A stretch of 64,000 nucleotides of DNA, from IMG/VR virus record IMGVR_UViG_3300010885_076238, positions 140,312 to 204,311 of that record; one strand, 5' to 3'. Positions 8,873 through 23,797 of the stretch are shown piece by piece. Position 1 is the stretch's first letter. Each line of letters opens with the position of its first letter. A model generated the notes under the pieces. It made no database searches. It saw only the letters and a list, made by a program, of their open reading frames with translations, and was not told the origin of the DNA. Both the position numbers and the translations under genes were made by a program.

Positions 8873-8878
8873 GTCCTA

Positions 8879-8910: not shown

Positions 8911-8959
8911 GCTAGAAAATAATTTTCAATCCAGTTCGTTATACAAGTAGGAGAAAAAA

Positions 8960-9322: not shown

Positions 9323-9363
9323 AATAAAAATTGATTTATTTCGTTATCTGATTAGGAGAAACA

Positions 9364-9750: not shown

Positions 9751-9837
9751 AGGCGAACACCTAATGTCTATAAAGCGGTTGGCTAGATAGCATAAAATAA
9801 AAATTGATTTATTTCGTTATCTGATTAGGAGAAATTC

Positions 9838-10014: not shown

Positions 10015-10025
10015 GTAAACACCTA

Positions 10026-10343
10026 ATGTCTATAAAAATGCAGTGGATTAGTTTTTTCGGCCCGCGCCGTCCAATCAACGGACAAAAGATTTTCTACTAC
10101 GGCGAGCATATCGGCGTTTGGAGTGGAACGTACAGCCTAGACTGGAATGATCCGGTTAGCCCCCATAGGATAATTTGTGGGGAAAAGCCAAGCAAGGAAA
10201 CCTCCGATGTATTGGCTGAGTACGGCTTGAACAATATCACCATGATTGTAGATCGAATGGATGCTCCTTGGTGGATGCCAGACGAGGGTCAGCCCAAGCC
10301 AGAAAAGCCAGATCAAAATTACCCGCCAGAATATCCAAAATAA
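10026..10343 (+). CDS. Hypothetical protein
   Basis: ORF overlapping the box at 10017. Confidence 0.6.
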   Translation: MSIKMQWISFFGPRRPINGQKIFYYGEHIGVWSGTYSLDWNDPVSPHRIICGEKPSKETSDVLAEYGLNNITMIVDRMDAPWWMPDEGQPKPEKPDQNYPPEYPK

Positions 10344-10380
10344 TTTTTAGTTCGGTTCGTTATACAAATAACAATACAAT

Positions 10381-10509
10381 ACGCGGCCTGCTGAAGTAGG
10401 TGGAACGTAACCACCTATACCAGTTCTGTGCGAGGAACTGGCAGGGGTAGTAGGGCAATCGCAAGCCCGAAATGAGAAAAGCCACAGCAATTACCACCGT
10501 GGCCCGCGT
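10381..10509 (+). ncRNA. Structured RNA 1 of cluster
   Basis: Closing acgcgg/ccgcgt; hairpins taggtgg/ccaccta, ccagttc/gaactgg, gggc/gccc, gccac/gtggc; follows a promoter. Confidence 0.65.
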
Positions 10510-10524
10510 AAAAATAATTTATTA

Positions 10525-10628
10525 CAATGCGTAGGTTAAGCGTTGAGCAGCCAGCGGTTGGCGGGAGTACTACCACAACCGTCCGTTAGACCAGCATAGG
10601 AAAGTGTGGGTAAAATCCCGCCGCATTG
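10525..10628 (+). ncRNA. Structured RNA 2 of cluster
   Basis: Closing caatgcg/cgcattg; internal cggttg/caaccg. Confidence 0.55.
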
Positions 10629-10650
10629 ATAATTTTAGTTATGTGATTAG

Positions 10651-10787
10651 AGAGAACAAGACAGGGGACGCAAGGTTGTTCGCGGCTGTCGAAGGCCAAG
10701 ACGGTTCGCTAAATAGACCTACGTTGAAGCAACATAGATCGCGTTCTGTGGCCGGTGCGACTCCGGGCGTCTCCTGTCCTGTTCTCT
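10651..10787 (+). ncRNA. Structured RNA 3 of cluster, with tRNA-like acceptor/T-arm end
   Basis: ~20-bp closing stem agagaaca-a-gacaggggacgc/gcgtctcctgtc-c-tgttctct; T-arm-like ccgg-tgcgact-ccgg. Confidence 0.65.
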
Positions 10788-10822
10788 TGAAAAATAATTT
10801 TCCTTTCTGTTCGTTATGTGAT

Positions 10823-10939
10823 TGTGGTGGGTTGCAAGGCCGGATGAACGGCTCCCCAATGGCTGTCATGAAAGCCGGGAAGTTGAATAGGTGGTCAAGT
10901 CGATGGTTTCAAACCAAAGGCGAATCCACTCACCCACAT
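10823..10939 (+). ncRNA. Structured RNA 4 of cluster
   Basis: Own CGTTAT promoter; closing tgtgg.tgggt/actca.cccaca; T-run at the end. Confidence 0.5.
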
Positions 10940-10961
10940 TTTTTCTTCTAATTTCTATATA

Positions 10962-11029
10962 CAGCAGAGAGAACTCGCCAAGAGGCCCAACGGCCACACT
11001 GGGAGAATTGGAGTAAGGAGCCTCTGCTG
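10962..11029 (+). ncRNA. Structured RNA 5 of cluster, or leader of the next gene
   Basis: Closing cagcagag/ctctgctg. Confidence 0.4.
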
Positions 11030-11047
11030 GGTTTCAAAGGAGTAAAT

Positions 11048-11203
11048 ATGTCAAAGCAAGAAATGATCGAAATTGTGGATTCTCAGGTCAAGTACGGACT
11101 GCCCAGAGAGGAAGCAATCCGCCTACTAGCTTTCTTTATGGACGAAGATGATCCAGAGAACAACGCAGAGATTTGGTTTCAGCAAAAAATCGGCGGCGGT
11201 TGA
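11048..11203 (+). CDS. Small hypothetical protein
   Basis: AAGGAG RBS, MSKQEMIEIVDSQ... Confidence 0.55.
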   Translation: MSKQEMIEIVDSQVKYGLPREEAIRLLAFFMDEDDPENNAEIWFQQKIGGG

Positions 11204-11248
11204 AAATAATTTCTGCCCTAATTCGTTATAAAATCAAGGAGATCATCA

Positions 11249-11473
11249 ATGACACTTGCAGAAGCCCGCAAGATGGCCCAAGAAGATGCTGACGATTATC
11301 AAGTCGTCGTCAATCTGATCTATGACAAACTCGCTGAGTACCCTGTGACTGACGATGGCGAGGACAACCGATACGGATTCTGTGCAGTAGGTGCTATGGA
11401 CATTATGTTTCCAGAATACCTCAAGGATTACTGGAACGTAGTGGGCGTGGTAAGCCCCAAGGGAGGAATATGA
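11249..11473 (+). CDS. Hypothetical protein
   Basis: Promoter + RBS. Confidence 0.65.
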   Translation: MTLAEARKMAQEDADDYQVVVNLIYDKLAEYPVTDDGEDNRYGFCAVGAMDIMFPEYLKDYWNVVGVVSPKGGI

Positions 11474-11658
11474 AAATGTTAGGAAGTTGCCATTGCGGAT
11501 CAGGCCAGCCTAGTTGGTGGGAAAACGATGCCAGAGGAATCCCTCTTGCAAGAATTTGCGAAAAGTGCAAAGAGGAAAAGCTGTCTAAGTACCGACCAGA
11601 AGTTCTGTCTAACTCAAACTACGAGGCAGACGAACCTATAGAGCCAGAAGATTACTAA
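11470..11658 (+). CDS. Small Cys-rich protein (CxCGSG...DARGI...CxxC)
   Basis: Zn-binding-type motif; coupled gene. Confidence 0.7.
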   Translation: MKMLGSCHCGSGQPSWWENDARGIPLARICEKCKEEKLSKYRPEVLSNSNYEADEPIEPEDY

Positions 11659-11673
11659 ACGGAGAGAATAATT

Positions 11674-11901
11674 ATGCAGGCGGACATAGCCACCTTGACC
11701 GTCAAGGCGAGGCAAAAGGCTCGCAAATGGGTCAAGGAAAGGCTGAAAATGCACCCCGGCAAGTTCGTGGTCAAACAAGGTGAGCAGTCTTGTCCTTGCT
11801 GGAACGGGGAAAACGCTATTCAGTTAGAGAACACGACCGACAGATGGAGCGGTTGGTTCCCCGTAACAGACATAGAAATCTCTAGCGACAATGAAAAATA
11901 A
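11674..11901 (+). CDS. Hypothetical protein
   Basis: GGAG RBS. Confidence 0.6.
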   Translation: MQADIATLTVKARQKARKWVKERLKMHPGKFVVKQGEQSCPCWNGENAIQLENTTDRWSGWFPVTDIEISSDNEK

Positions 11902-11927
11902 TTTTCACTTTTACTCGTTATCTATAT

Positions 11928-12158
11928 ATGGAACATTTAGGACATCAAAAATGGTGGTGCGACGTTTGCGACTCCAGGCAAGTGGATAGCAAAGATTCCA
12001 CAACTGGTTCGTACTATCAAGTAGCTGGCATGGAACATCCAGCCAGATCAAAAGAAGAAAAATGGACATCCATTATTTTCGCTGTCTGCTGCGAGTGTGA
12101 ACCAATCAAGGCTTTGCACAAAATCAAAGTCGAAAACCAAGTCGTTCGTAAAAATTAG
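11928..12158 (+). CDS. Small Zn-finger-like protein
   Basis: CxxC...CCEC. Confidence 0.55.
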   Translation: MEHLGHQKWWCDVCDSRQVDSKDSTTGSYYQVAGMEHPARSKEEKWTSIIFAVCCECEPIKALHKIKVENQVVRKN

Positions 12159-12284
12159 CTAATATACAAAATATTAATTAGCCAATAATTATTATTTTCA
12201 ACACCTGATGTTTATATGGAAACTAGACGGGGGCAATAAAATAATTTTCATTTCAAATCGTTATGTTCTTAGGAGGACAATGAA

Positions 12285-12467
12285 ATGAAAATTTGCACCA
12301 CCGATTCTATCTTGGAAAGCATCACTCAAAACAAGTTTGATGATGAATCCAATTCTCGTTCTGGCCGCATGAGTGGCGAAATGATGCGAATTGCCGACGA
12401 AGTCGAGCAAGAGCTAGAGGACGAGTTCATGGACGAGTGTGACGAGAGCAACAGGGAAGCGGCGTAA
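12285..12467 (+). CDS. Small acidic protein
   Basis: AGGAGG RBS; ends in -EAA. Confidence 0.6.
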   Translation: MKICTTDSILESITQNKFDDESNSRSGRMSGEMMRIADEVEQELEDEFMDECDESNREAA

Positions 12468-12555
12468 AGCCAGCATTTCCAAGGGTTTGCTGCTTGTCTC
12501 TTTTTTTTGGAAGCGCCGACCGACATTGGTCGTAGTTATCTCACAGGAGGAACCT

Positions 12556-12906
12556 ATGTATCGAAATTATGAAGAATACGAATCTGCTTTCGACAAGTTG
12601 CTAGATAACGCTCCTGCAAACGTCAAAATCAAAAAAAAGACGAGACAGGAGTTCGATTACGAAAATTATCGTGACAAGATCGAATGGTATTTGATGGAGG
12701 AATGGGGCACTGAGCCTTTCCACGAAATTTTCTTCGGCCATATCAGTGAGATCGAATCGGACGAGCCTACTCCCGAAGATTTTCGTGCAGAGGAATTGCA
12801 TGGCTGCGTCTATGACATCATCGACAGTTGCTACGAGAAGAAATTCAGCGTGAATCAGGCAGCGTCGAAAATTTATTTGTATTTGAAAAAAGAGAAGGCC
12901 ATCTAA
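12556..12906 (+). CDS. Acidic hypothetical protein
   Basis: AGGAGG RBS before ATG 12556. Confidence 0.65.
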   Translation: MYRNYEEYESAFDKLLDNAPANVKIKKKTRQEFDYENYRDKIEWYLMEEWGTEPFHEIFFGHISEIESDEPTPEDFRAEELHGCVYDIIDSCYEKKFSVNQAASKIYLYLKKEKAI

Positions 12907-12984
12907 TCAGGGCAAAATTTTTTTCGGTTCGGATCGTTATACCAATACAGGCCATGTGGCCTACTAACAAGGAGAAAAAGAAAA

Positions 12985-13341
12985 ATGCGTTTGACTGCGA
13001 AAGAAGCCGCCGAAAGGCTGAGTGTGAGTTATGTGATTGCCGCCGGTATTATGTCTTATCTTGAGGACACTGGTAAGGCCAAGGTTGTAGAGAAGAAGTT
13101 TCATGCAAGTGGGAAGGGTAAGCCAACCCGTGTCTATGAAGTAGATCAACTTACAGTGATTGACTTTGGTGATGCCGTTGCAAAGCCAGAAGTCGTGACG
13201 GTGACGGAGACAGTTGCAGTGACGGAGACGGTTGCGGTGACGGAGACGCTTCCAGCCGTGGCAGAGATTGCAGAGGATCGCGTCGAAACGCTGGATCATG
13301 TCGCTGCGGCTCTGGCTAGGCTGAAGTCTGAGGCTGCGTAA
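12985..13341 (+). CDS. Small winged-HTH-like protein, paralog 3
   Basis: N- and C-termini near-identical to 8960; VTETVA repeats in the linker. Confidence 0.75.
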   Translation: MRLTAKEAAERLSVSYVIAAGIMSYLEDTGKAKVVEKKFHASGKGKPTRVYEVDQLTVIDFGDAVAKPEVVTVTETVAVTETVAVTETLPAVAEIAEDRVETLDHVAAALARLKSEAA

Positions 13342-13522
13342 TACGCGCCCATAGGAATCCATCCCCCTCTGCTTCTCAATCGCGGAGGGGGGTGGATAAA
13401 CCTAAATTTGTGCTACTATAATAATACAACAATCGGCCGTCCGGCCGTGCCGCCACAAGCGCCACGGGTTGATTCCCCACGGGAGCCAGCCATCAAAGAC
13501 CGGCCCGCCGATTATTGCACAA

Positions 13523-13606
13523 GCCGAAGTGGCGGAATTGGCAGACGCGCCAGACTCAAAATCTGGTGTCCAAAAAGACGTGTGGGTTCAATTCCCACCT
13601 TCGGCA
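13523..13606 (+). tRNA. tRNA-Leu(CAA)
   Basis: GCCGAAG/CTTCGGC acceptor, CCAGA-CTCAAAA-TCTGG, long variable arm. Confidence 0.95.
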
Positions 13607-13691
13607 GTAACACCTACCGTTTATTATTAATTAATAATAAACCTATAAAATAATTAGTTCGCTCAATCGTTATTTGGTATGGAGGAAGGAT

Positions 13692-13868
13692 ATGTTTAGC
13701 AGGGAAGATTTACTTACAATTTTAGCGTGTTTGGAATGTAAAGAATACAACACGCAAGGCAAGATAGATTCAAGAGTTCCAGTAGAGGACGGCAAGAACG
13801 TCATCGACATCGTTGATATGTTGAACAGGATCGAAAAAATCAAAACTGTTATCAGGGATCAATTGTAA
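13692..13868 (+). CDS. Small hypothetical protein
   Basis: Promoter + GGAGG RBS. Confidence 0.55.
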   Translation: MFSREDLLTILACLECKEYNTQGKIDSRVPVEDGKNVIDIVDMLNRIEKIKTVIRDQL

Positions 13869-13937
13869 ATTCCTAAAATAATTAGTTCGCTCAATCGTTA
13901 TTTGGTATAGGGAAGATTTACTAAAAGAGAGAGTCTT

Positions 13938-14177
13938 ATGATTTTCAAACTGTTCAATGGAGCAAAAACTACAGAGGCTTGGAATCCTAATAGCCCTGAG
14001 TTTATTGACGATTGGAAACCGGAAGAACACATCATCAAGTGTCAGGCGGTTCAAGTTACTTACTGCAATCATATCAAAGTTCATGTTGACGATGATATGA
14101 TCGAGTTTCACTGGGACGAAGATGGCTTTATTGAACACGATGGCGTGTTTTATGGCGATTTCATCGTAGAAGGATAA
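13938..14177 (+). CDS. Hypothetical protein
   Basis: Promoter duplicated from 13647. Confidence 0.6.
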   Translation: MIFKLFNGAKTTEAWNPNSPEFIDDWKPEEHIIKCQAVQVTYCNHIKVHVDDDMIEFHWDEDGFIEHDGVFYGDFIVEG

Positions 14178-14184
14178 ATTACAA

Positions 14185-14856
14185 ATGTCTAACAACTATG
14201 TCACAATGAACATAAGAATGTATGCCTCCAAGCCAGATAAGGTTATGGAGCAAGTCATTCTAAATCTTGGATGGGAATGGTACTCAGCAAGCAAGGCTTG
14301 TGAATACGCCAGAAAAGTTATAAAGGGCAGATGGATCAAAGGCGAAAGAAAGATCAAGAAAAATCCATACTCCGCCTACTTTTATGCTCGCCATGTTATC
14401 GGAGGAAGATGGCCCGAAGCAGAAAATTTTATCTTGAAGGATGAACACGCCTCTTACTTGTACGCTAAGTATGTTCTCAAAGGCAGGTTTGAGAAAGCAG
14501 AGAAAAAGAGAGGGCTTTTCAAGTCGCCTAGAGAAATATACTTCTACTCCAAATACGTTATGAAGTCTAGGTGGAAAGAAAAAGAAAAGTCTATGGTAGA
14601 CTTTGTTGTAAAAAATACCTGGGGCTTTGAGAAGGTTTTCGACTACTGTATTCAGATCAGAAAAGAAAGATGGCCCCAAATTGAAGGCGAAATTGTAAAG
14701 TCCAGCAAAGAATACATCGGTCGTTATTTCAAATTATTGAAAGAAAAGGACAAGGAAGAATTTTATAATAAAGTTCTCGCCCAGTCTCTCGTAGAACCAA
14801 GAAGTTCTTGGCAACGAAACGAAGCCAGAGAATTTATCAAAACTATGAAAAACTAG
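14185..14856 (+). CDS. Helical repeat protein (YA..V.KGRW.EAE repeats)
   Basis: About five internal ~25-aa repeats. Confidence 0.7.
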   Translation: MSNNYVTMNIRMYASKPDKVMEQVILNLGWEWYSASKACEYARKVIKGRWIKGERKIKKNPYSAYFYARHVIGGRWPEAENFILKDEHASYLYAKYVLKGRFEKAEKKRGLFKSPREIYFYSKYVMKSRWKEKEKSMVDFVVKNTWGFEKVFDYCIQIRKERWPQIEGEIVKSSKEYIGRYFKLLKEKDKEEFYNKVLAQSLVEPRSSWQRNEAREFIKTMKN

Positions 14857-14878
14857 TTTGAACATACTATTATAAAGT

Positions 14879-15139
14879 ATGTATTCTGAAAAACATTGCA
14901 TCATTACAATAAATGGCGACGAGTGTACCGTAGAGGGAAAATGCCTACTGACCGATAAACGTCAATTTGTAAAAGTAGCAAAGGAAGATTATGAAAAATG
15001 GGTCAGGGGAGAAGGAGCTATAAAAACTCTTATGCCCTATCTAACCGAAAGCGAAATGAACTTTCTTGAACACGGCGTTACAGATGAAGGTTGGGGAAAA
15101 GTAGTAAGTCCAAAAATTTCAATCCCAAAAGCAGAGTAG
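14879..15139 (+). CDS. Hypothetical protein
   Basis: PYLT..E..FL..G.T..GW pattern. Confidence 0.6.
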   Translation: MYSEKHCIITINGDECTVEGKCLLTDKRQFVKVAKEDYEKWVRGEGAIKTLMPYLTESEMNFLEHGVTDEGWGKVVSPKISIPKAE

Positions 15140-15328
15140 CCCGCACAAATTTAGACGGCAATATCTTATAAATATTCTGCCTCGCATTCGTTACGACTAA
15201 AAACATATAAAATAATAATTGTCATAAAAATAAAAATCACCTGATGTTTATATGGTCAGCAGAAGGATAAAAATAATTTTCGATCCAGTGCGTTATGGAA
15301 ATATAAGTTCCACAACCGGAGAAAAGGT

Positions 15329-15574
15329 ATGACAAAGAGAGAGCAGCAGACGGTAAAAAGGATGCTGGAAACGGGCCGCGTGATTGATTTCCGTGACGAA
15401 CGCCGACCGGGGGAAGTCGCGGAGGATGGCAACGGCTTGTGGGCATACCTCAAACCTGGCCTGAGATGCAGTCTGTCCGACACCCACATTTGCCACGAAT
15501 ATACGGTGGCTGACCTAGCTCGTGCCGTCAAGTGGGCTGAACCGTGCAATTGCAACGAGTGCAATATAAAATAA
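15329..15574 (+). CDS. Hypothetical Cys-containing protein
   Basis: Promoter + RBS. Confidence 0.6.
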   Translation: MTKREQQTVKRMLETGRVIDFRDERRPGEVAEDGNGLWAYLKPGLRCSLSDTHICHEYTVADLARAVKWAEPCNCNECNIK

Positions 15575-15612
15575 TTTTCGATCCAGTGCGTTATCCCAGC
15601 AGAGGAGACAAT

Positions 15613-15768
15613 TATGCCAAACTGGTTTGAAGATCCCGCCGTTTTGGATAAGTGGACGATCATTGAAGTTCAGTTGGATGAAGCCGACTGTCAAGAATAC
15701 AACGAGTACCTTGACTGGCTTGAGGCAACAACCGGCGAACAAGAGATGCCAGAAGATTTTTCTTACTA
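15613..15768 (+). CDS. Small acidic protein (51 aa)
   Basis: Promoter + GAGGAG RBS, MPNWFEDP... Confidence 0.6.
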
Positions 15769-15819
15769 GTAAAAAATAATTTTCGATCCATTTCGTTATA
15801 GAAAACAGGAGAAAAAATA

Positions 15820-16140
15820 ATGATTACTGCAAAAAATGCGTTAGAAGCACTTTGTCGTGATGGACTCGCTACAAGTTGGACGAGGAAAACTGAGGGTAGC
15901 GGAAGGCTTCGCTACACAGATTACACTGTGAAAAGCGATGCCTTTTCCCTCTCAAACGAAACCTATGGACAAAGAAGTTTTTTATACTTTCGATGCAAAA
16001 GCCCAGAACTTACTTATCAAATAATCAAAGTTCTTCGTGAAAATGGAGGCAACCCAGGAACTAGTTGGAATGGTGGGCCTGAACAGGGACACATCGAAAT
16101 GCAAGTCAGTAGGTTCAAAGGTTGGCATTGGTGGGAGTAA
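15820..16140 (+). CDS. Hypothetical protein
   Basis: Promoter + AGGAG. Confidence 0.65.
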   Translation: MITAKNALEALCRDGLATSWTRKTEGSGRLRYTDYTVKSDAFSLSNETYGQRSFLYFRCKSPELTYQIIKVLRENGGNPGTSWNGGPEQGHIEMQVSRFKGWHWWE

Positions 16141-16405
16141 GAAGCACAAAAATAAAAATAAAGTCTAGCCCAACCTGCCCAATACATATTCATACAGAAT
16201 GGCAGGTTGGGCTTAGGTGCTTAAACACCTAGTGTTTATTATAAGAATAAATAAAAAATTGGGGTTGGGCGCATTTCTATCGCTCTTATCGCTGTGACAA
16301 TTTGATAACGATTCTTTTCAAAAATAATTTTCCCAAAAATTATTTTCCCTTTCGACCGTTGTGCAGTATGGCCGCGATTGAGACGGCCAAGCCAAATCGG
16401 GAAAC

Positions 16406-16987
16406 ATGAAAATGGATACGATGACTTCGGATCAGTTGGTTGACCGTCTGCTTGATCTGCGTGGTGCGAAGTGCGGCTTTCGCATGGTCGCTGAAACCCC
16501 GACCCGTCTGAATAAGACGATTCGTGATGCGGCGGGCAATCGCGTTCCGAACCCCGCCTACGGCACTACAAAGTTGTCGGAAGTGGAAGTGACGCTGAAC
16601 CCGATCCATCAGAACAACGTAAACGCTCAGAAAAAGCGTGAGGGACACGATCCCGATTACGTTGCTGGGCCTTGCCAGTGGGGCAAGCGTCTGTTTCGGG
16701 AGGATGGTACGGTCGTGCCGATTCGGATTCACGACGGCAAGCCGCATAGCATGGTCGTGAAGTTTGAGAGAACGATCCAACGCGAGTTCCTCCGCGACGG
16801 CAAGCCGGTTGATGCGGCATCGGCCGCAGAGATTGCAAAGCAGTTGGCAGAGAAGAATGAAAAGGCCAACGACGCTGCGGAAGAAAAGCAGGGCGTGGAA
16901 AAGCCGGTGATCCACTTGACCTACAGTTTCGAGAACATTCGTCAAGTCACGCTCGACGGCGTGGTTTACGAAATCACTAAGGGTTGA
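16406..16987 (+). CDS. Hypothetical cassette protein
   Basis: Promoter, leader hairpin, high-GC codon usage, downstream hairpin at ~16996-17026. Confidence 0.7.
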   Translation: MKMDTMTSDQLVDRLLDLRGAKCGFRMVAETPTRLNKTIRDAAGNRVPNPAYGTTKLSEVEVTLNPIHQNNVNAQKKREGHDPDYVAGPCQWGKRLFREDGTVVPIRIHDGKPHSMVVKFERTIQREFLRDGKPVDAASAAEIAKQLAEKNEKANDAAEEKQGVEKPVIHLTYSFENIRQVTLDGVVYEITKG

Positions 16988-17101
16988 CCGATCCGGCCCC
17001 TCCCCCTACTGGGGGAGGGGTTAGGGGATAAAGAATAATTTCCGATCCGGTTCGTTATCTAGTATGGCCGCGATTGAGACGGCCAAAAAAGGAGAGCGAT
17101 C

Positions 17102-17338
17102 ATGACCTACCTTCACGACATTCACCCCGCCGCGACGATCATCGAAAGCCCGTTCACCGGCCACAACGGCAGCGGAGTCGATGGATACGGCGGGAAAATC
17201 AAAACCGGATTCAAGGTCAGAATCAACAATCGACTCCATAGGCTCTACTGTATGTGCTGGTCGAACTCTGGCACACTTTGGGTCAACGTGGGCGGGAAGC
17301 AGATCATCGTTCACGAGCATCGGCATCCAAGGGAATAA
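17102..17338 (+). CDS. Conserved phage hypothetical protein (GYGGKI.T...RLY..CWSNSGT)
   Basis: Promoter, leader hairpin, AGGAG. Confidence 0.7.
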   Translation: MTYLHDIHPAATIIESPFTGHNGSGVDGYGGKIKTGFKVRINNRLHRLYCMCWSNSGTLWVNVGGKQIIVHEHRHPRE

Positions 17339-17545
17339 AATCCCATTCATCAAACACCTGATGTTTATATAGCGGCGGACGAGCCGCGCCGAGCCTGGGC
17401 TGGGCGCATTTCTATCGCTCTTGTCCCTCTGACATTTTGATAACGAATTAGATGGAAAAAAATTTTGGCCAAAATTATTTTGGCTTTCGACCGTTATGCA
17501 GTATGGCCGCGATTGAGACGGCCAGCCTTAGTGGGAGATTGAATC

Positions 17546-18487
17546 ATGGCTCATAAAGTCGAAAACATGTTCTACGTTGGCGAGACGCCTTGGCATGGTC
17601 TGGGCGTTGCTTTGGAAGAGGCTCCGATCATTTCCGACGCCATTACGGCGGCGGGTCTGGATTGGACTGTCGGACTCCGCGACCTTTTCACGGCAGACGG
17701 CGTAAAGGTGCCGAATCGTGCGACGGTTCGCGAGACGGACGGAAGTGTGCTGGGCGTTGTCGGCCCGCGTTACACTCCGCTCCAAAATGCGGCGGCTCTC
17801 GACTGGTTTCAGCCGTTCATCGACAGCGGAGAGGCTTCGCTTCACACTGCCGGTAGCCTTGACGAGGGTCGCAAGGTCTGGGTGCTTGCCCAGTTGAACC
17901 GCGACCCCAGTGTGATCGTTCCGGGCGACGACGTTCGCAAGTTCATTCTCTTGTCGAATTCGCACGACGGCACGACGGCGGTTCGTCCGGGTTTCACGCC
18001 GATTCGCGTTGTCTGTGCGAATACGCTCGCGGCGGCTCATTGCTCGACCGCCAGCAAGTTGATTCGCGTTCGTCACACTCGCAAGATTGCGACGAATTTG
18101 GAAAAGGTTCGCGAGTTGATGAACGCCGCGAACGCGGAATTCGAGGCGACTGCCGACCAGTATCGGCATCTTGCCAGCAAGGCGTTCAACCAGACCGACG
18201 TTCGCAAGTACGTCAAGGTGCTGCTCGACGTTGAGACGGTTTCGGATGCCGACCTGCCCACTCGCACCAAGAATACCATCGAGGAAATTCTTGGACTGAT
18301 CGAGGGGCCGAAGCAATCGATGCCGGGCGTTCAAGGCACTTGGTGGGCCGCGTACAACGGGTTCAACGAATACTTGAACTACAATCGCGGTCGCACGACC
18401 GACAACCGTATGAACAGCCTATGGTTCGGCATGGGTGCGACCGACAACCGCAAGGCTCTCGACCTTGCCCTTAGCTTGTCGGCCTAG
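17546..18487 (+). CDS. DUF932 (LGT_TIGR03299)-family protein
   Basis: PWHGLG, Y.PLQN, NSHDG, TPIRVVCANTL, GTWWAAYN motifs. Confidence 0.9.
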   Translation: MAHKVENMFYVGETPWHGLGVALEEAPIISDAITAAGLDWTVGLRDLFTADGVKVPNRATVRETDGSVLGVVGPRYTPLQNAAALDWFQPFIDSGEASLHTAGSLDEGRKVWVLAQLNRDPSVIVPGDDVRKFILLSNSHDGTTAVRPGFTPIRVVCANTLAAAHCSTASKLIRVRHTRKIATNLEKVRELMNAANAEFEATADQYRHLASKAFNQTDVRKYVKVLLDVETVSDADLPTRTKNTIEEILGLIEGPKQSMPGVQGTWWAAYNGFNEYLNYNRGRTTDNRMNSLWFGMGATDNRKALDLALSLSA

Positions 18488-18607
18488 TGCGAACGATGCC
18501 CCCTACCCGAAAGGGTAGGGGGGATTCATCGTAAAATTATTTTCGGTTTGATTCGTTATCTAGTATGGCCGCGATTGAGACGGCCAAGCCAATCGGGAGA
18601 CCTAATC

Positions 18608-18796
18608 ATGATCATCGCCGCCATCCTCGCCGCCGCGTACGTCGCTTTCGGCATCGCCGGGACATCGTACGTCAACCGTTGGATTCGCAACGCTGACGAC
18701 GGGGATGCAGGCTGCGGCCTGTCGAGCCTGCACATTCTCAACCCCATCATGGTGGTGGTTGGAGCGAGAATGATGCTCGACAAGCTGTCCTCCTAG
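18608..18796 (+). CDS. Small membrane protein, copy 1
   Basis: Hydrophobic N-terminus; paralog of 25015. Confidence 0.7.
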   Translation: MIIAAILAAAYVAFGIAGTSYVNRWIRNADDGDAGCGLSSLHILNPIMVVVGARMMLDKLSS

Positions 18797-18926
18797 CGGG
18801 GGGCAGCCGCCCAACTCAACACCTAATGTTTATTGGCAAAGGTGAGCAATAAAAAATAAATTCCCAGCTAATTCGTTATCTAGTATGGCCGCGACAGTGA
18901 CGGCCAAGCCAATCTAGGAAATAACG

Positions 18927-19268
18927 ATGGCTCGCAAGCGTAGGTCAGACCGTAATCACGCGGTCTATCAGATTGTTTGCAAACCAACTGGAGAGCGTTA
19001 CATCGGACTGACGGTAGTGCGTGGAAGAGCCGTTCAGAAGAGCGTGAAGATTCGTTGGGACGGCCATGTTCATCACGCCGTAGTAGAGAGAGACAACCCG
19101 CTTCAACGTAGAATTCGTGAGTTTGGCCCCGAAGCATTTTCTCACGAACTGCTTCAAGTTGTGAGAGGCAAGCAGCCCGCTCATGACATTGAAAGGGGCT
19201 TGATCGTCAATATGAAGCCCGAACTGAATGTGGAGTGTACCGGCAAGAAACAAGCAAATCGTTCCTAA
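18927..19268 (+). CDS. GIY-YIG nuclease-like protein
   Basis: VYQI...YIGLT...RW..H...E...PELN. Confidence 0.75.
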   Translation: MARKRRSDRNHAVYQIVCKPTGERYIGLTVVRGRAVQKSVKIRWDGHVHHAVVERDNPLQRRIREFGPEAFSHELLQVVRGKQPAHDIERGLIVNMKPELNVECTGKKQANRS

Positions 19269-19324
19269 TTTTTTCGACTCTCATTCGTTATACAAATGTA
19301 GCCACCACCCCAAGCAGGAAAAAA

Positions 19325-19528
19325 ATGACTATCACAGAAGTCATCACGCCCGGCCCAGGCGGATTCAAATTTCTCAACATGACGAACGAGAAGTTCGACT
19401 CGTTCACCGCAGACGAAATCATTGCCGCTGCGGAAGCGGCCGGTCTGTGGACATACTACGAACTGGACGACGACGGGAAGCTGACCGGCTTGGCGATCAC
19501 CACGAAAGAAAGAGAGCCAAACGGATAG
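19325..19528 (+). CDS. Small hypothetical protein
   Basis: Promoter + AGGA. Confidence 0.6.
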   Translation: MTITEVITPGPGGFKFLNMTNEKFDSFTADEIIAAAEAAGLWTYYELDDDGKLTGLAITTKEREPNG

Positions 19529-19763
19529 CGGGCTTTGGCCCAATGCTCTAACACCTAATGTTTATAATCAACAGTGAGTTGCTTGCCAAAACCAAAGGAG
19601 CCGGACATGGAAACTTTTGAGCAGTGGTGCAAGAGGATGCAAGAAGAACACGATCAATGGATTTCAAGTCCCGAAGGACAAATCTGGATCAAGGGCTAAA
19701 AATTATTTTCGGTTTGATTCGTTATCAAGTATGGCCGATCATTCAACACCTAAGGAACAAGTC

Positions 19764-20078
19764 ATGAAAGCCAAAGAAGTGCAGATTGGACAGGAGTTCT
19801 ACACCAACTACGCGAGCATGGAACACTGCAAGCCGCTGTCTAACGTTCATCGTTGGAAAATGATCGCTCCAGAGCATCGGTTGGCGCAGCTTGTGCTTGT
19901 CACCGGGGACGTTTGCGATCACACTCGCATCATCGATGAAAAGGAAGAAGTGTTCGCCACAGCCGGTGAAGCTTGGCAAGATTGTGCGACTCAACTCAAC
20001 GCGATCATCGAAAAGATTCGTGAAGCCGTCAAGGATTGCGAGTCCAAAGTTCCCCGCCAGTGCAAGGAATCCGCGTGA
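19764..20078 (+). CDS. Hypothetical protein
   Basis: Promoter + AAGGA; start re-assigned. Confidence 0.6.
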   Translation: MKAKEVQIGQEFYTNYASMEHCKPLSNVHRWKMIAPEHRLAQLVLVTGDVCDHTRIIDEKEEVFATAGEAWQDCATQLNAIIEKIREAVKDCESKVPRQCKESA

Positions 20079-20137
20079 AAAAGGGGGCTTGGGAAACCAA
20101 GTCCCCAATAATTAACACCAAATGTCTATTATAGAGT

Positions 20138-20422
20138 ATGAGACTATTTATTGATGACATCAGAACTCCATCCGAAGACTACATCGTTCTCCGGTCTTCT
20201 GAGGATGCCATTCAATTCATAAAGCAAAATGGCTGGCCTGAGTTCATCAGTTTTGACCACGATCTTGGCGGCGACGATACCACTATGGTCTTTCTCAAAA
20301 GGCTTGTAAACGAAGTATGGGACGGCAAAACCATGCCGCCAGACTATATCGTTCATAGTGCCAACCCAATTGGATCGAAGAACATCGTGAGTTTCATGGA
20401 AAGCTGGAAGAAGTCAATCTAA
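20138..20422 (+). CDS. Cyclic-phosphate-processing receiver-like domain protein
   Basis: LFIDDIR...ISFDHDLG...VHSANPIG signature. Confidence 0.8.
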   Translation: MRLFIDDIRTPSEDYIVLRSSEDAIQFIKQNGWPEFISFDHDLGGDDTTMVFLKRLVNEVWDGKTMPPDYIVHSANPIGSKNIVSFMESWKKSI

Positions 20423-20496
20423 AAAATTTTTTTTACTTTCATTCGTTATACCAATATGGCAGCAATTGAGACTGCCGGATTACTAGGATTGCTCTA

Positions 20497-20574
20497 ATGT
20501 TTGGACTCGTTTCTATGATTTTGTTTAGCGTCGGAACTATTGGATTTTTCTACGTCACTAAGGAGGGCAACTAA
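20497..20574 (+). CDS. Putative 25-aa membrane peptide
   Basis: After leader hairpin + AGGA; MFGLVSMILFSVGTIGFFYVTKEGN. Confidence 0.45.
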   Translation: MFGLVSMILFSVGTIGFFYVTKEGN

Positions 20575-20726
20575 TGTTTATCGTAATTGAGCAGAAGGAA
20601 GACGGCACGACTCAGATTCTTTCGCCCGTAATCAACGACCAGAAAGAAGCAGAAGTAGAGGCTGCTTGGATTTCCCACCTGAACGGTTGGAGTTGCACAG
20701 TAAAGCAAGTGGATCAAGCCGCTTGA
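20574..20726 (+). CDS. Small hypothetical protein (50 aa)
   Basis: AAGGAGG RBS; TAATG coupling; ends in -QAA. Confidence 0.55.
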   Translation: MFIVIEQKEDGTTQILSPVINDQKEAEVEAAWISHLNGWSCTVKQVDQAA

Positions 20727-20858
20727 AACAATCGGCAGTAAACCTGCCACCCAACCCAAAAGGTTGGGCCATTAGCAAATACCTAATGTTTATTGTTGAA
20801 TCGAACCTGATAAAAATAATTTTCGATCTAGTTCGTTATAGATTTAGGAGGACGTTTT

Positions 20859-21071
20859 ATGACTAAGCCCGTTGAAATCTCAACCAAGGAAATGTGGGAA
20901 CTCTCAGCAGTGGGAGCCTGCATTCTTCTAGCTGTTCAAGAGATGGAAGAAGATGCTGTCGGCAGGCAAAAGGTGATCGAAGCGGGAAACCGTTTGTTCG
21001 ATCTCATGGGCAAAATTGGAGAACGAGATGATTGGTCATCCAGAAGCCCAAAAGGAGAGGAAAAAGTATGA
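20859..21071 (+). CDS. Hypothetical protein
   Basis: Promoter + AGGAGG. Confidence 0.6.
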   Translation: MTKPVEISTKEMWELSAVGACILLAVQEMEEDAVGRQKVIEAGNRLFDLMGKIGERDDWSSRSPKGEEKV

Positions 21072-21234
21072 AAAAAACTGTCGGAGCAACCAAGGCTCAC
21101 GCATCATGCGGATATTGCAAACACTTGCGCAAGTTCGGAAAGCGACTTGCCAATAAGGCTTCTCGCAAACACGGAAATAATTTTCGATTCAATGCGTTAT
21201 CAAATATAGAGAATCCCAACCCCGGAGAATAATC

Positions 21235-21465
21235 ATGTTCAAGAAGAAAACCGATGGTCGATTCCGTGTCGAGCTGAAGTATAAGAACGGCAGCGAAGCA
21301 TTCATGGTCAGCAACGACTACCAGCAAATCTGCCGCCTGTACGAGCTTGCCAGAACTCCCATTTGCGAAAATTTCACACAGTCGATCTACGAAGTGATCT
21401 TGTTCGACGGCGATAAGCCCCTTGCAAACTGGACTAACTCAGCCGCATTAGTCAAAGTGGCTTGA
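21235..21465 (+). CDS. Hypothetical protein
   Basis: Promoter + GGAG. Confidence 0.6.
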   Translation: MFKKKTDGRFRVELKYKNGSEAFMVSNDYQQICRLYELARTPICENFTQSIYEVILFDGDKPLANWTNSAALVKVA

Positions 21466-21473
21466 CAATCCTA

Positions 21474-21550
21474 GGCGATTCTGGGTAGGGCCGGTCTCAT
21501 GAGCCGGATTGGGTAGCACCCCCCGCGTGGTTCGATTCCACGACTCGCCA
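21474..21550 (+). tRNA. Atypical D-arm-less tRNA-like RNA, anticodon CAT
   Basis: Acceptor GGCGATT/ACTCGCC-A, anticodon arm CCGGT-CTCATGA-GCCGG, T-arm CGTGG-TTCGATT-CCACG; only 10 nt in place of the D-arm. Confidence 0.65.
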
Positions 21551-21585
21551 TTTAGAATGCGGTAAAATGCAACAAGGAGCAAACC

Positions 21586-21825
21586 ATGAATACTGAATTT
21601 TATGTGGGCGAACACCGTGGTATCTGGGTAGGCCCAGTCATCCGAAATAAACAGACGAATCATCCTGTGGCATTCGTCGCAGCCGGATCAGAACACTTTT
21701 CCGAAATATTATCCCTAGCACCAGAAATGCTTGAAGCACTACGGAAAATCAGGAATAACTCAGACAACGCGGAAGTCAACAAAATCGCATCAGAAATCCT
21801 ACTCAAGGCAACCAAACACGCCTAA
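21586..21825 (+). CDS. Hypothetical protein (APEMLEAL motif)
   Basis: AAGGAG RBS; common phage motif. Confidence 0.65.
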   Translation: MNTEFYVGEHRGIWVGPVIRNKQTNHPVAFVAAGSEHFSEILSLAPEMLEALRKIRNNSDNAEVNKIASEILLKATKHA

Positions 21826-22011
21826 TCGTCAACACCTAATGTTTATTTCCCGAACGGGACAATTCAGACAAAAATCAGGCAATTTATAATAATTATTCCC
21901 GCTCGGGAAAGTTAGGTAATCTGTGCAAGCCCATAAAAGAAAATAAAAAATCCAAGGCCCGATTGACGATAGATAAGGTACGGGACAGAAAACCATTCAA
22001 AGGAGTGAATC

Positions 22012-22278
22012 ATGTTGGCTTGGATCGGAATCGCAATAACCGCCGTTGGAATGATTTTTAGTAGCTATGAGTTCGTGAAAAAAAATCCAGAACTCTTGCC
22101 CAAAGTTCAAAACGTACAACTGCTGGCCCATCGTCAACGTCAATCAGCGTTCATGTACAGTCAAGTAAATTTGGCCTATGATGTTGTGAACGGAAAACAT
22201 TGGTTTCAACACCCAGACGGTCAGTGGAGAGAATTCCCACCAAAACCCTCTCAAGTCGATATGCAAAACAGCCGATAA
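22012..22278 (+). CDS. Membrane-anchored hypothetical protein
   Basis: N-terminal hydrophobic helix; AAGGAG. Confidence 0.6.
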   Translation: MLAWIGIAITAVGMIFSSYEFVKKNPELLPKVQNVQLLAHRQRQSAFMYSQVNLAYDVVNGKHWFQHPDGQWREFPPKPSQVDMQNSR

Positions 22279-22902
22279 ATAAAATAAGGAAAGGAATCCA
22301 AAATGAAAAAAATCAACTGGAACCAAATCGTCAACGCTCTTATTCTTGTCAAAATAGGACAAGACTTAGGAACCAACTCGCAACTTACCCAATCCATCCA
22401 TCATATCATCGACGTTATTGCTACGTTCGCTAATGCCTTTGTAAGAATATAAAATAATTTCTCGATCAGTTCGTTATACAATAGTGGCCGTCCCATTCTC
22501 AGGAGAGCAAACATGAACACTGACACCAACTGGACTTACGAGCGCGAGGGAGCCAAAGAGATGATCGCAAGGCTCGAAGAAGAAATTCAGAATTCGACCT
22601 CCAAGCAGGATCGAATCAACAAACAGGAAGAAATACAAAGACTCCAATCGTAAAGAGTCAAAAAATAATTTTCAATCCCGTTCGTTATACAATAGTGGTC
22701 AACTAAAGGTGCTGACTGAAAGTGACACACGGCGGACAAGGTGGCCGACCGCAGGATCAGCACCACTCTAAAGGATCAAAAATGTATCTGACTCTCAATG
22801 ATTGGATGATGCTCGTTGGACTGATTTCTTTCGCAGGATTCTGTTCCTACACTGCCCACGAAATTCAAGGTGCAATCCACAACTACTTACATGGAGAATA
22901 TA

Positions 22903-23247
22903 ATGATTTTTGAAGTTGAAATGCTCGCGTTCGGAAAACCAGGAGAAGTTCGCAAGGTCAATGTTCCCGATGAGGCTCTAACTCGCGCAAAAGAAGATAC
23001 AGACAATATTCTTGAAGCCGCGTTTTATTACGGCCAAAACGATTTCCAGCCGCAAAACCACCCGTCAGTAAGTGCTGGCGATGTGATCCGCTGGAAAGAA
23101 GAAAACTATCTGGTTGCTGGTATGGGTTTCAAAAAGCTGACCGATGAACAACTAAATGATTATCGATCTCTCGACCAAAACGATAAGTTCATCGGAAGAT
23201 GCCAAATTGAAATAGGCGAACCAGTAGTAGGACGCAGAAACAAGTAA
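22903..23247 (+). CDS. YodL-like protein
   Basis: PSVSAGDVI...YLVAGMGFKKL resembles the YodL signature. Confidence 0.6.
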   Translation: MIFEVEMLAFGKPGEVRKVNVPDEALTRAKEDTDNILEAAFYYGQNDFQPQNHPSVSAGDVIRWKEENYLVAGMGFKKLTDEQLNDYRSLDQNDKFIGRCQIEIGEPVVGRRNK

Positions 23248-23442
23248 CCTGCACAATTCCATCAAACCATCAAAGCCCTAATAAATAATAAATATCGCTT
23301 ACGAAAGTGATATTTATAGGGCTTTATCTAACACCTAATGTTTATAAAACATCGCTAGTCGAAAAAAATAATTTTCGATCCAGTGCGTTATGCCAATGTG
23401 GGCAGCAATTGAGACTGCCCCCGTTTTCAGGAGGTTTGAATC

Positions 23443-23652
23443 ATGGGTGACGAAGATTCCTTTCTCGATTCGCGTTGGGAAGAAATTTGCGAGTATGAAG
23501 ACTCGTACGAGCAAGAGGATTGCTTCGATGACTTCGACGATGAAGATGATGAATACGATTGCTTCAGCGAAGACGACAACGACGACTTTGAAGACGACTT
23601 CGCTGACGACAACTACGACGACTACGACGACTTCTACGAGGAAGCCGCGTGA
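23443..23652 (+). CDS. Extremely acidic small protein (DNA-mimic candidate)
   Basis: More than half D/E with spaced F/Y; promoter, leader hairpin, AGGAGG. Confidence 0.7.
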   Translation: MGDEDSFLDSRWEEICEYEDSYEQEDCFDDFDDEDDEYDCFSEDDNDDFEDDFADDNYDDYDDFYEEAA

Positions 23653-23797
23653 AAATAGGGGGCTTGGGAAACCAAGCTTCCCCCAACTATCAACACCTAA
23701 TGTTTATAATGCCAACCCGCCGGAAACTTCTCGAAGAAAAATAATTTTCCATTCAAATCGTTATAAATCATCGGCCCAAAACCCTGAGGATCAAATC

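What the first reader, a model, noticed from the sequence alone, without database searches (positions are those of the whole stretch)
16261..17500. Two back-to-back promoter pairs firing a conserved antisense RNA toward the box
Seen: 16266-16311 and 17401-17446 share gggcgcatttctatcgctctt...gaca.tttgataacga. ATAACG plus the downstream A/T tract is the phage promoter on the minus strand, directly abutting the plus-strand promoter. These are the only minus-strand copies I found. The predicted transcript (...AAGAGCGAUAGAAAUGCGCCCA...) has no ORF and runs into a 17-bp box 60-70 nt away. Inference: a short regulatory RNA or a replication primer/R-loop (by analogy to T4 promoter-dependent origins).
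Basis: partly seen in the sequence, partly recalled or inferred. Interest (0 to 1): 0.65.

Follow-up and report, generated by a model that had tools for sequence, protein, structure and literature searches.

The report
Back-to-back phage promoters, leftward short RNA
In an uncultivated 204-kb freshwater phage, two intergenic regions each carry a leftward copy of the phage's own promoter set back-to-back against a normal rightward one; related phages keep this arrangement, so it is probably functional and most likely makes a short non-coding RNA of unknown role.

Summary
The 21-mer occurs exactly twice in the whole 204-kb virus record. It lies inside a 128-nt repeat (16262-16389 and 17397-17524). 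A matrix trained only on rightward promoters (AAAATAATTTT-N10-CGTTAT) finds 87 rightward sites and 2 leftward sites, and these are the two.

Three related metagenome contigs also have a leftward promoter abutting the rightward promoter of the orthologous gene. Their spacers are randomised but the promoter elements are kept. In one contig the -10 variant GGTTAT appears in both orientations.

The first ~40 leftward-transcribed bases are 78% identical between phages (21-mer 19/21). Four-fold sites of the neighbouring gene are only 45% identical.

In one relative the same promoter drives a leaderless 68-aa Cys-rich protein gene. This phage has only 60-67 nt before the AACACCT..TGTTTAT box, and no conserved ORF.

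Best reading: a real divergent promoter that makes a short non-coding leftward RNA with a constrained, unstructured 5' end. Its role is inferred, not shown: regulatory or antisense RNA is more likely than a replication primer.

No RNA data, Rfam match, target or consensus fold was found. It is a new variant of promoter/terminator cassettes (PeSL-like) and of phage antisense RNAs. Interest is moderate.

The parts
16167..16213 (.). 13-bp-stem hairpin after the upstream gene (15820-16140). On the minus strand it is followed by a U-rich run (16163->16149), so it is a possible 3' end of the copy-1 leftward RNA.
   Evidence: (150-nt leftward RNA folds at -44.9 kcal/mol, z -4.65). A relative (L132) has the same gene-hairpin-box order without the A-tract, so the terminator reading is tentative.
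16224..16239 (+).
   Evidence: about 28 copies on the + strand against 3 poor ones on -. Most lie 39-43 nt before the next CGTTAT, and some have no promoter after them.
16262..16304 (-). Conserved leftward-transcribed segment of copy 1, containing the 21-mer (16267-16287). Predicted start is at 16298-16300.
   Evidence: 38/43 identical to copy 2. 32/41 identical to L151, against 34/75 at four-fold sites of the adjacent gene. The start is placed from the leaderless-gene architecture.
16305..16331 (-). Leftward promoter, copy 1: TCGTTAT (16311->16305), 9-nt spacer, A/T block (16331->16321).
   Evidence: 23.8 bits. The -10 element is 7/7 and the block 10/11 identical to copy 2, but the spacer only 2/9.
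16336..16362 (+). Rightward promoter, copy 1: A/T block 16336-16346 and CGTTGT 16357-16362.
   Evidence: 32.0 bits. It lies 4 bp from the leftward A/T block.
16370..16388 (+). 5'-terminal hairpin GGCCG-CGATTGAGA-CGGCC of the rightward mRNA for gene 16406-16987 (193 aa, no family).
   Evidence: stem covariation across copies and phages.
17353..17368 (+). Box AACACCTGATGTTTAT, copy-2 side, after gene 17102-17338 (78 aa).
17397..17439 (-). Conserved leftward-transcribed segment of copy 2, with the 21-mer at 17402-17422. Predicted start is at 17433-17435.
17440..17466 (-). Leftward promoter, copy 2: TCGTTAT (17446->17440), spacer, A/T block (17466->17456).
   Evidence: 29.3 bits.
17471..17497 (+). 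Rightward promoter, copy 2: A/T block 17471-17481 and CGTTAT 17492-17497.
   Evidence: 35.1 bits.
17505..17523 (+). 5'-terminal hairpin of the rightward mRNA for gene 17546-18487 (313 aa, DUF932).

Best explanation
Each site is a genuine divergent pair of the phage's own promoter class. The rightward member starts the mRNA of the 193-aa gene or of the DUF932 gene. That mRNA begins with the conserved GGCCG-CGATTGAGA-CGGCC hairpin.

The leftward member, 4 bp away at the A/T blocks, starts about 70 bp from the rightward start. It launches a short non-coding RNA of roughly 75-150 nt. This RNA runs through a conserved, unstructured, purine-rich 5' segment of about 40 nt, reaches the box at +60 to +67, and then meets the hairpin that closes the upstream gene.

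Shown from sequence: the promoter match, its uniqueness on that strand, its retention in relatives, and selection on the first ~40 transcribed bases.

Inferred: that it fires, where the RNA ends, and what it does. I take the RNA to be regulatory. The likeliest roles are pairing with the 3' end or read-through of the upstream cassette (lambda OOP-style), or acting in trans through its conserved single-stranded 5' end.

The slot is old. In one relative the same promoter expresses a leaderless 68-aa Cys-rich protein gene, and the RNA-only form here may descend from such a cassette.
For: 1. Strand-unique, high-scoring promoter matches: 87 on + and 2 on - at 14 bits or more, 0 in shuffles.

2. Between the two copies, differences pile up in the promoter's non-informative positions. 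The leftward spacer plus inter-block are 3/13 identical, against 106/115 elsewhere (Fisher p = 9e-8).

3. Orthologous back-to-back pairs exist in three independent contigs:
- L132 (193-aa homolog 88% identical): leftward promoter at 18.1 bits.
- L150 (upstream of a DUF932 92% identical): CGTTAG, 11.4 bits.
- L151 (82% homolog): the leftward -10 is GGTTAT, exactly as in both rightward promoters of that contig.

4. Copy 1 vs L151: the leftward-transcribed segment is 32/41 identical and the 21-mer 19/21. Four-fold sites of the adjacent gene are 34/75, and the promoter spacers are 2/8 and 3/10 (p = 8e-4 and 1.7e-4).

5. The start site is fixed by about 20 rightward promoters whose ATG, 5-6 nt after CGTTAT, opens ORFs of 60-440 codons, implying leaderless mRNAs. 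L132's leftward promoter has the same geometry in front of a protein with 55 homologs, so this promoter type can work leftward.

6. It is non-coding here. The MRP.. micro-ORFs (11 and 14 codons) lose their ATG and hit a stop after 3 codons in L151.

7. The module is kept in a second population: the 2022 metagenome contigs cover both copies, and the two listed changes in copy 1 (16288, 16341) turn it into the state of copy 2 or of the promoter consensus.
Against: There is no transcript evidence of any kind, because no RNA run holds the phage.

No Rfam family matches. There is no consensus fold (-1.27 kcal/mol).

No complementary target was found in the phage beyond chance. The 19-mer hits in prokaryote genomes are at chance level.

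The two copies share no common 3' end or terminator.

The copy-2 ortholog in L150 keeps the motif only loosely (~60%). The exact identity of the two copies here may therefore owe something to gene conversion.

Conservation of the 21-mer would fit a DNA-binding site equally well.
Confidence: 0.45

Rival explanations
1. Relic. The leftward promoter once served a divergently oriented small gene, as it still does in L132. The gene was deleted, and the promoter plus a stub remain with no present function of their own.
For: L132 has a 68-aa conserved protein gene exactly in this slot, between the box and the leftward promoter. The own genome lacks any homolog. The stub reads ..DKSDRNAP.. in one frame and weakly resembles L132's ..RSDHANVAP.. 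linker (local DNA alignment p about 0.05 for copy 1 and 0.19 for copy 2).
Against: A dead promoter and stub should decay. Instead the promoter elements and the 21-mer stay at 90-100% while spacers a few bases away are randomised, both within this genome and against L151. Three gene-less versions persist (two here, one in L151), plus a looser one in L150. The DNA similarity to the L132 gene is marginal and absent for other family members.
Confidence: 0.2
2. DNA operator. The conserved 21-mer and its neighbouring half-repeats (TATCGCTCT / TRTCSCKNT) bind a phage or host protein that controls one or both promoters. The sequence is conserved as DNA, not as RNA.
For: The segment has no conserved RNA fold and no RNA target. 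It contains two imperfect 9-nt direct repeats. It lies at +10 to +35 of the leftward start and about -80 to -105 of the rightward start, which are ordinary operator positions. It travels with the 193-aa gene (copy 1, L151).
Against: No candidate binding protein was identified; the neighbouring proteins have no family or solved relative. The motif is always tied to a conserved leftward promoter. A third promoter of the same subtype (8235) lacks both the leftward promoter and most of the motif.
Confidence: 0.15
3. Replication origin. The leftward transcript forms an R-loop or primer, as at T4 oriF/oriG or the T7 primary origin.
For: There is a promoter plus a purine-rich initial transcript (71-80% purine over the first ~25 nt, read). 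There is an AT-rich stretch downstream in copy 1 (16237-16262), and AT-only palindromic blocks lie between the two promoters.
Against: The AT-rich downstream stretch is absent in copy 2 and in L150, which are GC-rich there. Every promoter of the class has the A/T block. Cumulative GC skew rises steadily through the site. In L132 the same promoter simply expresses a gene.
Confidence: 0.07
4. A translated micro-ORF or leader peptide: MRP... from the ATG inside the 21-mer, or the 7-codon leaderless ORF of copy 2.
For: An ATG with AAGAG 8 nt upstream is shared by both copies. All three micro-ORFs (copy 1, copy 2, L150) end at the TAA of the box.
Against: The peptides are unrelated beyond MRP. In L151 the ATG becomes TTG and a stop follows after 3 codons, although the 21-mer is 19/21 conserved. 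Copy 1 has TTG at the leaderless position.
Confidence: 0.03

Closest known systems
PeSL cassettes (promoter-early stem-loop) of T4-type phages (PMC2839356, PMC4122927)
   Same: Both are short repeated intergenic composites of a stem-loop or terminator-like element, an AT-rich block and an early-type promoter. Both flank small orphan genes in a hyperplastic region. Population variants here differ by cassette-sized indels whose joints lie at these repeats (skips 15767->16143, 17085->18622 and others).
   Different: The promoter is not sigma-70-like (AAAATAATTTT-N10-CGTTAT). No T4 capsid (Gp23) or PolB family match was found in the 88%-complete record, though the Gp23 search had no positive control. 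PeSLs are described as one-directional: the 2010 paper contains no 'antisense' or 'opposite orientation'. Here two cassettes carry an extra inverted promoter arm that relatives conserve.
Phage lambda OOP RNA, and P22 sar (PMC5415839)
   Same: All are short non-coding RNAs made from a promoter that faces against the flow of early transcription and overlaps the 3' end of the convergent gene. Copy 2 would reach the stop codon region of gene 17102-17338.
   Different: There is no sequence relation. Transcription and RNase III-type decay are untested. Two copies exist per genome. The conserved part is the 5' end, which lies in intergenic DNA and is not opposite a coding region.
Promoter-dependent origins (T4 oriF/oriG, T7 primary origin; from general knowledge)
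   Same: A phage promoter whose short transcript has no coding role.
   Different: No conserved unwinding element lies downstream, there is no skew signal, and no replication data exist.
Back-to-back divergent promoters of bacteria (from general knowledge)
   Same: Two promoters have upstream elements that abut and starts about 70 bp apart, so they can compete or couple through supercoiling.
   Different: Here one arm has no gene, yet its first 40 transcribed bases are conserved.

Membership tests
PeSL cassettes | Repeated intergenic composite of a stem-loop, an AT-rich tract and an early promoter | tested here: met
   Box or hairpin, then A/T block, then CGTTAT, repeated dozens of times on the + strand.
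PeSL cassettes | Promoter is a strong sigma-70-like -35/-10 pair | tested here: not met
   The consensus has no TTGACA/TATAAT pair. The sigma-70 scan finds 1 site in 15700-17700 against 1.8 expected; the motif logo is.
PeSL cassettes | Recombination between copies shuffles orphan genes | tested here: met
   Contigs of a second population skip or replace whole cassettes, with joints at promoter or hairpin repeats.
PeSL cassettes | Host genome is a T4-type myovirus | tested here: inconclusive
   There is no Gp23 or DNA_pol_B match in the record. The Gp23 search had no positive control, and the record is only 88% complete.
cis-antisense RNA of the lambda OOP type | Own promoter on the strand opposite to the operon | tested here: met
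   with relatives.
cis-antisense RNA of the lambda OOP type | Short, non-coding, ends at a terminator | tested here: inconclusive
   It is non-coding. Copy 1 has a hairpin plus U-run. Copy 2 has only weak hairpins.
cis-antisense RNA of the lambda OOP type | Overlaps the 3' end of the convergent mRNA and triggers its cleavage | not testable with these tools
   This needs RNA 3'/5' ends and RNase mutants. No RNA runs are available.
Promoter-dependent replication origin | Conserved DNA-unwinding (AT-rich) element downstream of the promoter | tested here: not met
   It is present only in copy 1. Copy 2 and L150 are GC-rich there.
Promoter-dependent replication origin | Persistent RNA:DNA hybrid that primes the leading strand | not testable with these tools
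   No nascent-strand or R-loop data exist.
Any Rfam RNA family | Covariance-model match | tested here: not met
   Searches (gathering threshold, whole window; E up to 5 or 1) give nothing credible.

The most novel reading that the evidence does not exclude
The leftward product is a lineage-conserved phage regulatory RNA that acts in trans through its unstructured 5' end. It could be a seed against a host transcript. Alternatively it could be a decoy, since it carries GCGAUAGAAA, close to the GCGAUUGAGA loop of the hairpin that heads at least 12 early mRNAs, and so might titrate whatever binds that loop. On this reading the 'slot' promoter is a conserved device that different relatives load with an RNA or with a small Cys-rich protein.
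Probability: 0.15. Interest if true: 0.65.

Novelty: new variant of a known kind. Interest (0 to 1): 0.45.

Why it matters
Regulatory signals of uncultivated jumbo phages are almost unknown. This record gives a clean promoter class: 87 sites, many of them serving leaderless mRNAs. It also gives two exceptional leftward copies that relatives keep under selection.

If the leftward RNA is real, it would be a conserved phage-encoded non-coding RNA that can be found from sequence alone. It would also extend the promoter/terminator-cassette (PeSL) idea beyond T4-type phages, with a divergent arm that can carry either an RNA or a gene.

If it is only a relic, the case shows how cassette shuffling leaves orphan promoters behind.

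Tried and rejected
- Near-identical phage records: none.
- IMG/VR scans found nothing related. I tried the 21-mer, a relaxed 19-mer, the back-to-back architecture and a common promoter variant. The one relaxed-motif hit lies in a coding region of an unrelated phage.
- JGI metagenome scan for the architecture: three loci, all 100% identical to the window, so not independent.
- IMG/VR relatives of the DUF932 gene (76 loci) belong to other phages with TTGACA/TAGAAT promoters and lack the module.
- Hairpin pattern in IMG/VR: almost all hits are coding-region coincidences, and only L113 is a true 5' hairpin.
- RNA runs: none.
- Trans targets: 10-12-mer complements in the phage are at chance level. 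Duplex energies against 303 start regions fall within the shuffle range. A first, larger duplex scan timed out.
- 19-mer in 185,579 prokaryote genomes: 5 scattered hits, about the number expected by chance.
- Consensus RNA fold of four leftward 5' regions: none. Single folds of the conserved 38 nt have z of -0.3 and -0.6.
- Long antisense ORFs (58 aa at 16193->16017; 110 aa at 17353->17021) were rejected. They overlap real + genes, and their start context is out of frame in L151.
- A lambda-type nut reading (copy 1 contains CGCTCTTA, which I recall as lambda boxA) was rejected. Copy 2 and L151 have CGCTCTTG, and the hairpin is about 80 nt away and on the far side of a promoter.
- The phage sigma-like gene (genome 58185-59198) sits behind a promoter of this same class, so it is probably not what defines the class. 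No T7-type RNA polymerase or RNA polymerase beta subunit was found.
- GC skew is uninformative.
- The 193-aa protein, the DUF932 protein and the 68-aa protein have no family or solved relative that suggests a function.

Full report
**Setting**

The window is the last 64 kb of a 204,311-bp IMG/VR virus record from a freshwater metagenome, estimated 88% complete. No close relative exists in the phage collection. The backbone is about 30% G+C. Window 8-26 kb is an island of small genes reaching 50-54% G+C.

**The promoter class**

A repeated motif precedes genes on the + strand: an 11-nt A/T palindrome (AAAATAATTTT), 10 variable bases, then CGTTAT.

- A weight matrix built from 46 rightward sites finds 87 sites at 14 bits or more on the + strand, all between genome 54.9 and 166 kb. 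None appear in shuffled sequence.
- About 20 of these sites have an ATG 5-6 nt after CGTTAT that opens an ORF of 60-440 codons. Those mRNAs must therefore be leaderless. This fixes the start site 5-7 nt after CGTTAT.
- Others are followed by a Shine-Dalgarno sequence, or by a 19-nt hairpin described under side observations.
- The record has a sigma-like gene but no RNA polymerase subunit or T7-type polymerase. The sigma gene itself sits behind a promoter of this class. The class is thus probably read by host polymerase, though that is an inference.

**Checking the observation**

The 21-mer is exact at 16267-16287 and 17402-17422 and occurs nowhere else in the record. It lies in a gapless 128-nt repeat.

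On the minus strand each copy has TCGTTAT, a 9-nt spacer and an A/T block at consensus spacing. They score 23.8 and 29.3 bits, and they are the only two minus-strand sites in 204 kb at 14 bits or more.

Each leftward A/T block lies 4 bp from the A/T block of a rightward promoter (32.0 and 35.1 bits). The predicted starts are therefore about 70 bp apart and diverge. The box AACACCTRRTGTTTAT begins 59-67 nt downstream of the leftward start.

**Is it more than a duplicated accident?**

Within the genome, the two copies differ almost only where the promoter model carries no information. The leftward spacer plus the 4-bp inter-block are 3/13 identical. The rest of the repeat is 106/115 identical (Fisher p = 9e-8).

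The stronger test came from relatives. Homologs of the 193-aa gene (16406-16987) lie on short metagenome contigs from other samples.

- L132 (88% protein identity) uses the same promoter class (7 rightward sites). It has one leftward site (18.1 bits), back-to-back with the promoter of the orthologous gene.
- L150 has a leftward CGTTAG site (11.4 bits) abutting the promoter of a DUF932 gene that is 92% identical to 17546-18487. This is the ortholog of copy 2.
- L151 (82% identity) has the arrangement upstream of the 193-aa homolog. Its leftward -10 reads GGTTAT, exactly as both rightward promoters of that contig do. The leftward element therefore changes together with the rightward ones, as expected if the same machinery reads it.

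In the five-way alignment the -10 elements, both A/T blocks and the rightward hairpin are kept, while the spacers are unalignable.

**The transcribed segment**

Between copy 1 and L151 the first 41 alignable leftward-transcribed bases are 78% identical, and the 21-mer is 19/21. By comparison:

- Four-fold degenerate sites of the adjacent gene are 34/75 (45%) identical.
- The two promoter spacers are 2/8 and 3/10 identical (p = 8e-4 and 1.7e-4).

Because randomised spacers lie within 10-30 nt of the conserved block, recent transfer of the module cannot explain this. The block is under constraint.

The L150 version is looser: GGTGGCATTTCCGCATCGCC, about 60% identical. The perfect identity of the two copies in this genome may therefore partly reflect conversion between them. 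The two listed changes in copy 1 in a 2022 population (16288 A>G, 16341 T>A) turn it into the state of copy 2 or of the promoter consensus. That fits either conversion or selection.

**What the promoter drives**

In L132 the ATG of a 68-aa ORF sits 5 nt after the leftward CGTTAT, which is the leaderless geometry. The ORF ends just before the box.

Its product belongs to a conserved Cys/His-rich family with 55 homologs at 62-85% identity, mostly in co-directional gene arrays of other phages. The family has no Pfam or PHROG name. So the leftward promoter is a working expression slot in at least one relative.

This phage has no homolog of that gene and only 59-67 nt between start and box. The short ORFs there (4-14 codons) are not conserved. 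L151 turns the shared ATG into TTG and stops after three codons while keeping the 21-mer.

In one frame the stub reads ..DKSDRNAP.., which faintly recalls the ..RSDHANVAP.. linker of the L132 protein. The DNA similarity is marginal (p about 0.05 and 0.19). Descent from a deleted gene is therefore possible but unproven.

**Properties of the predicted RNA**

- The conserved 38 nt do not fold better than shuffles (z -0.3 and -0.6).
- Four orthologs give no consensus structure.
- The first ~25 nt are 71-80% purine.
- Copy 1 continues through an AU-rich linker, the box hairpin and a 13-bp hairpin (16167-16213). On this strand that hairpin is followed by a U-rich run, so a 135-150-nt RNA is plausible. 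The equivalent hairpin in L132 lacks the run, so I do not lean on it.
- Copy 2 runs through GC-rich hairpins and the box, into the stop-codon hairpin of gene 17102-17338.
- I found no target. Complements in the phage are at chance level. Duplex energies with 303 start regions lie within the shuffle range. The 19-mer core occurs 5 times in scattered prokaryote genomes, about the chance number.
- No Rfam family matches.

**Weighing the readings**

That the leftward elements are functional promoters I put at about 0.75. This rests on their strand uniqueness, the substitution pattern, their retention in relatives, the shared GGTTAT variant in L151, and proven use for a gene in L132.

The product here is non-coding, because it has no conserved ORF.

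That the RNA itself is the functional product, acting as a regulatory or antisense RNA, is my best explanation at 0.45. The rivals are:

- A relic of a lost gene: 0.2. This is disfavoured by the selective pattern.
- A DNA operator shared by the two promoters: 0.15. It fits the lack of fold and target, and the two 9-nt half-repeats.
- A promoter-primed origin: 0.07. There is no conserved unwinding element and no skew signal.
- A micro-peptide: 0.03.

The remainder is chance or other explanations.

**Comparison with known systems**

The surrounding architecture works like the PeSL cassettes of T4-type phages. These are terminator-like stem-loops plus an AT tract plus an early promoter, flanking orphan genes and serving as recombination points (PMC2839356, PMC4122927). 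Contigs of a second population differ from the window by whole-cassette skips and replacements joined at these repeats.

It is not a member in the strict sense. The promoter is not sigma-70-like, no T4 capsid (Gp23) or PolB family match was found in the record (the Gp23 search had no positive control), and PeSLs are not described with an inverted arm.

The leftward RNA would work like lambda OOP (77 nt, antisense to the 3' end of cII; PMC5415839). Nothing beyond geometry could be tested.

**Side observations**

- The 19-nt hairpin at the 5' end of at least 12 rightward mRNAs has the loop CGATTGAGA. Its stems vary in a complementary way: GGCCG/CGGCC, GGCAG/CTGCC, GTCAG/CTGAC, GACCG/CGGTC, GAGCC/GGCTC, AGCAG/CTGCT, CGCCG/CGGCG. 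It also recurs behind quite different promoters in other phages.
- The leftward RNA carries GCGATAGAAA, which resembles that loop. I could not tell whether this is descent, mimicry or chance.

No step had to be left out or referred.

Noticed in passing
window 8269-8287, 8587-8605, 16370-16388, 17066-17084, 17505-17523, 18567-18585, 18887-18905, 20458-20476, 23401-23419, 24528-24546, 24977-24995, 25736-25754; also L113, L132, L133, L149-L153: A 19-nt hairpin (5-bp stem, 9-nt loop CGATTGAGA) lies 7-9 nt after the -10 element, at the very 5' end of many early mRNAs. At least seven stem variants are all complementary, and the loop is nearly invariant. It also occurs behind unrelated promoter types in other freshwater phages. 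It has no Rfam match. It is a candidate protein-binding or stabilising 5' element.
   Followed up: partly
about 28 copies on the + strand, e.g. window 1604, 3633, 8178, 9756, 12200, 15236, 16224, 17353, 18818, 23330, 25231: The box AACACCTRATGTTTAT is strictly strand-biased (3 poor matches on -). It usually lies 39-43 nt before the next CGTTAT, but sometimes has no promoter after it. It is often preceded by a GC-rich hairpin. It is probably the 3' or terminator part of a promoter/terminator cassette. It contains ACACCU, which resembles the anti-Shine-Dalgarno tail.
   Followed up: partly
genome-wide, e.g. window 1254, 1630, 2958, 3677, 7011, 11895: About 20 promoters have an ATG 5-6 nt after CGTTAT that opens a long ORF (up to 439 codons). 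A sizeable share of this phage's early mRNAs should therefore be leaderless.
   Followed up: partly
L132:3684-3887 (minus strand): A 68-aa Cys/His-rich protein (..PINDNNSRFDLVEI..PTPHCKIHGAMNCVA..LWRCIQSN..KDCRAGCEE) has 55 homologs at 62-85% identity, including on contigs longer than 200 kb. It has no Pfam or PHROG family. It is an unnamed, widespread small phage protein, probably zinc-binding.
   Followed up: partly
L150:677-830: In this relative, a rightward promoter is followed by about 100 nt with no ORF and then a canonical hairpin plus T-run terminator. This sits between the 189-aa gene and DUF932, and it converges on the box with the leftward promoter. It is a candidate small RNA gene.
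   Followed up: no
window 14500-19500 (contigs of runs X3-X6): A second population (2022 metagenome) is 96-99% identical but differs by whole-cassette indels or replacements. Examples are 15227->15568, 15767->16143 (loss of gene 15820-16140), 17085->18622 (joined at the 5' hairpins) and a 19261->18533 back-joint.
   Followed up: partly
window 8000-26000: This is an island of small genes at 45-54% G+C in a 30% G+C phage. Several of them (the 193-aa gene, DUF932) have close homologs in phages with other promoter types. The genes look acquired and then fitted with the resident promoter. The 193-aa gene and DUF932 are also neighbours in L136 and L150.
   Followed up: partly
window 43111-46752 and 44551-44902 (minus strand); 2641, 4003, 13523 (+): There is a phage-borne tmRNA (127 bits) and at least 11 tRNA genes. 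A tRNA nucleotidyltransferase-like gene lies at 51710-53035.
   Followed up: no
window 56942-64000: An ORF of more than 2,353 codons runs off the contig end. It has long arrays of 54- and 57-nt in-frame tandem repeats (62.5-64.0 kb).
   Followed up: no
window 18927-19268: A 113-aa ORF has weak matches to homing-endonuclease (GIY-YIG type) PHROGs. It is possibly a truncated mobile endonuclease inside the cassette island.
   Followed up: no
window 8198-8245: A third promoter of the same subtype (spacer CTTCGAC, 8235) has an upstream stretch faintly like the 21-mer (..GCACTTTCTAC..) but no leftward promoter. It may be a deleted or ancestral form of the module.
   Followed up: partly
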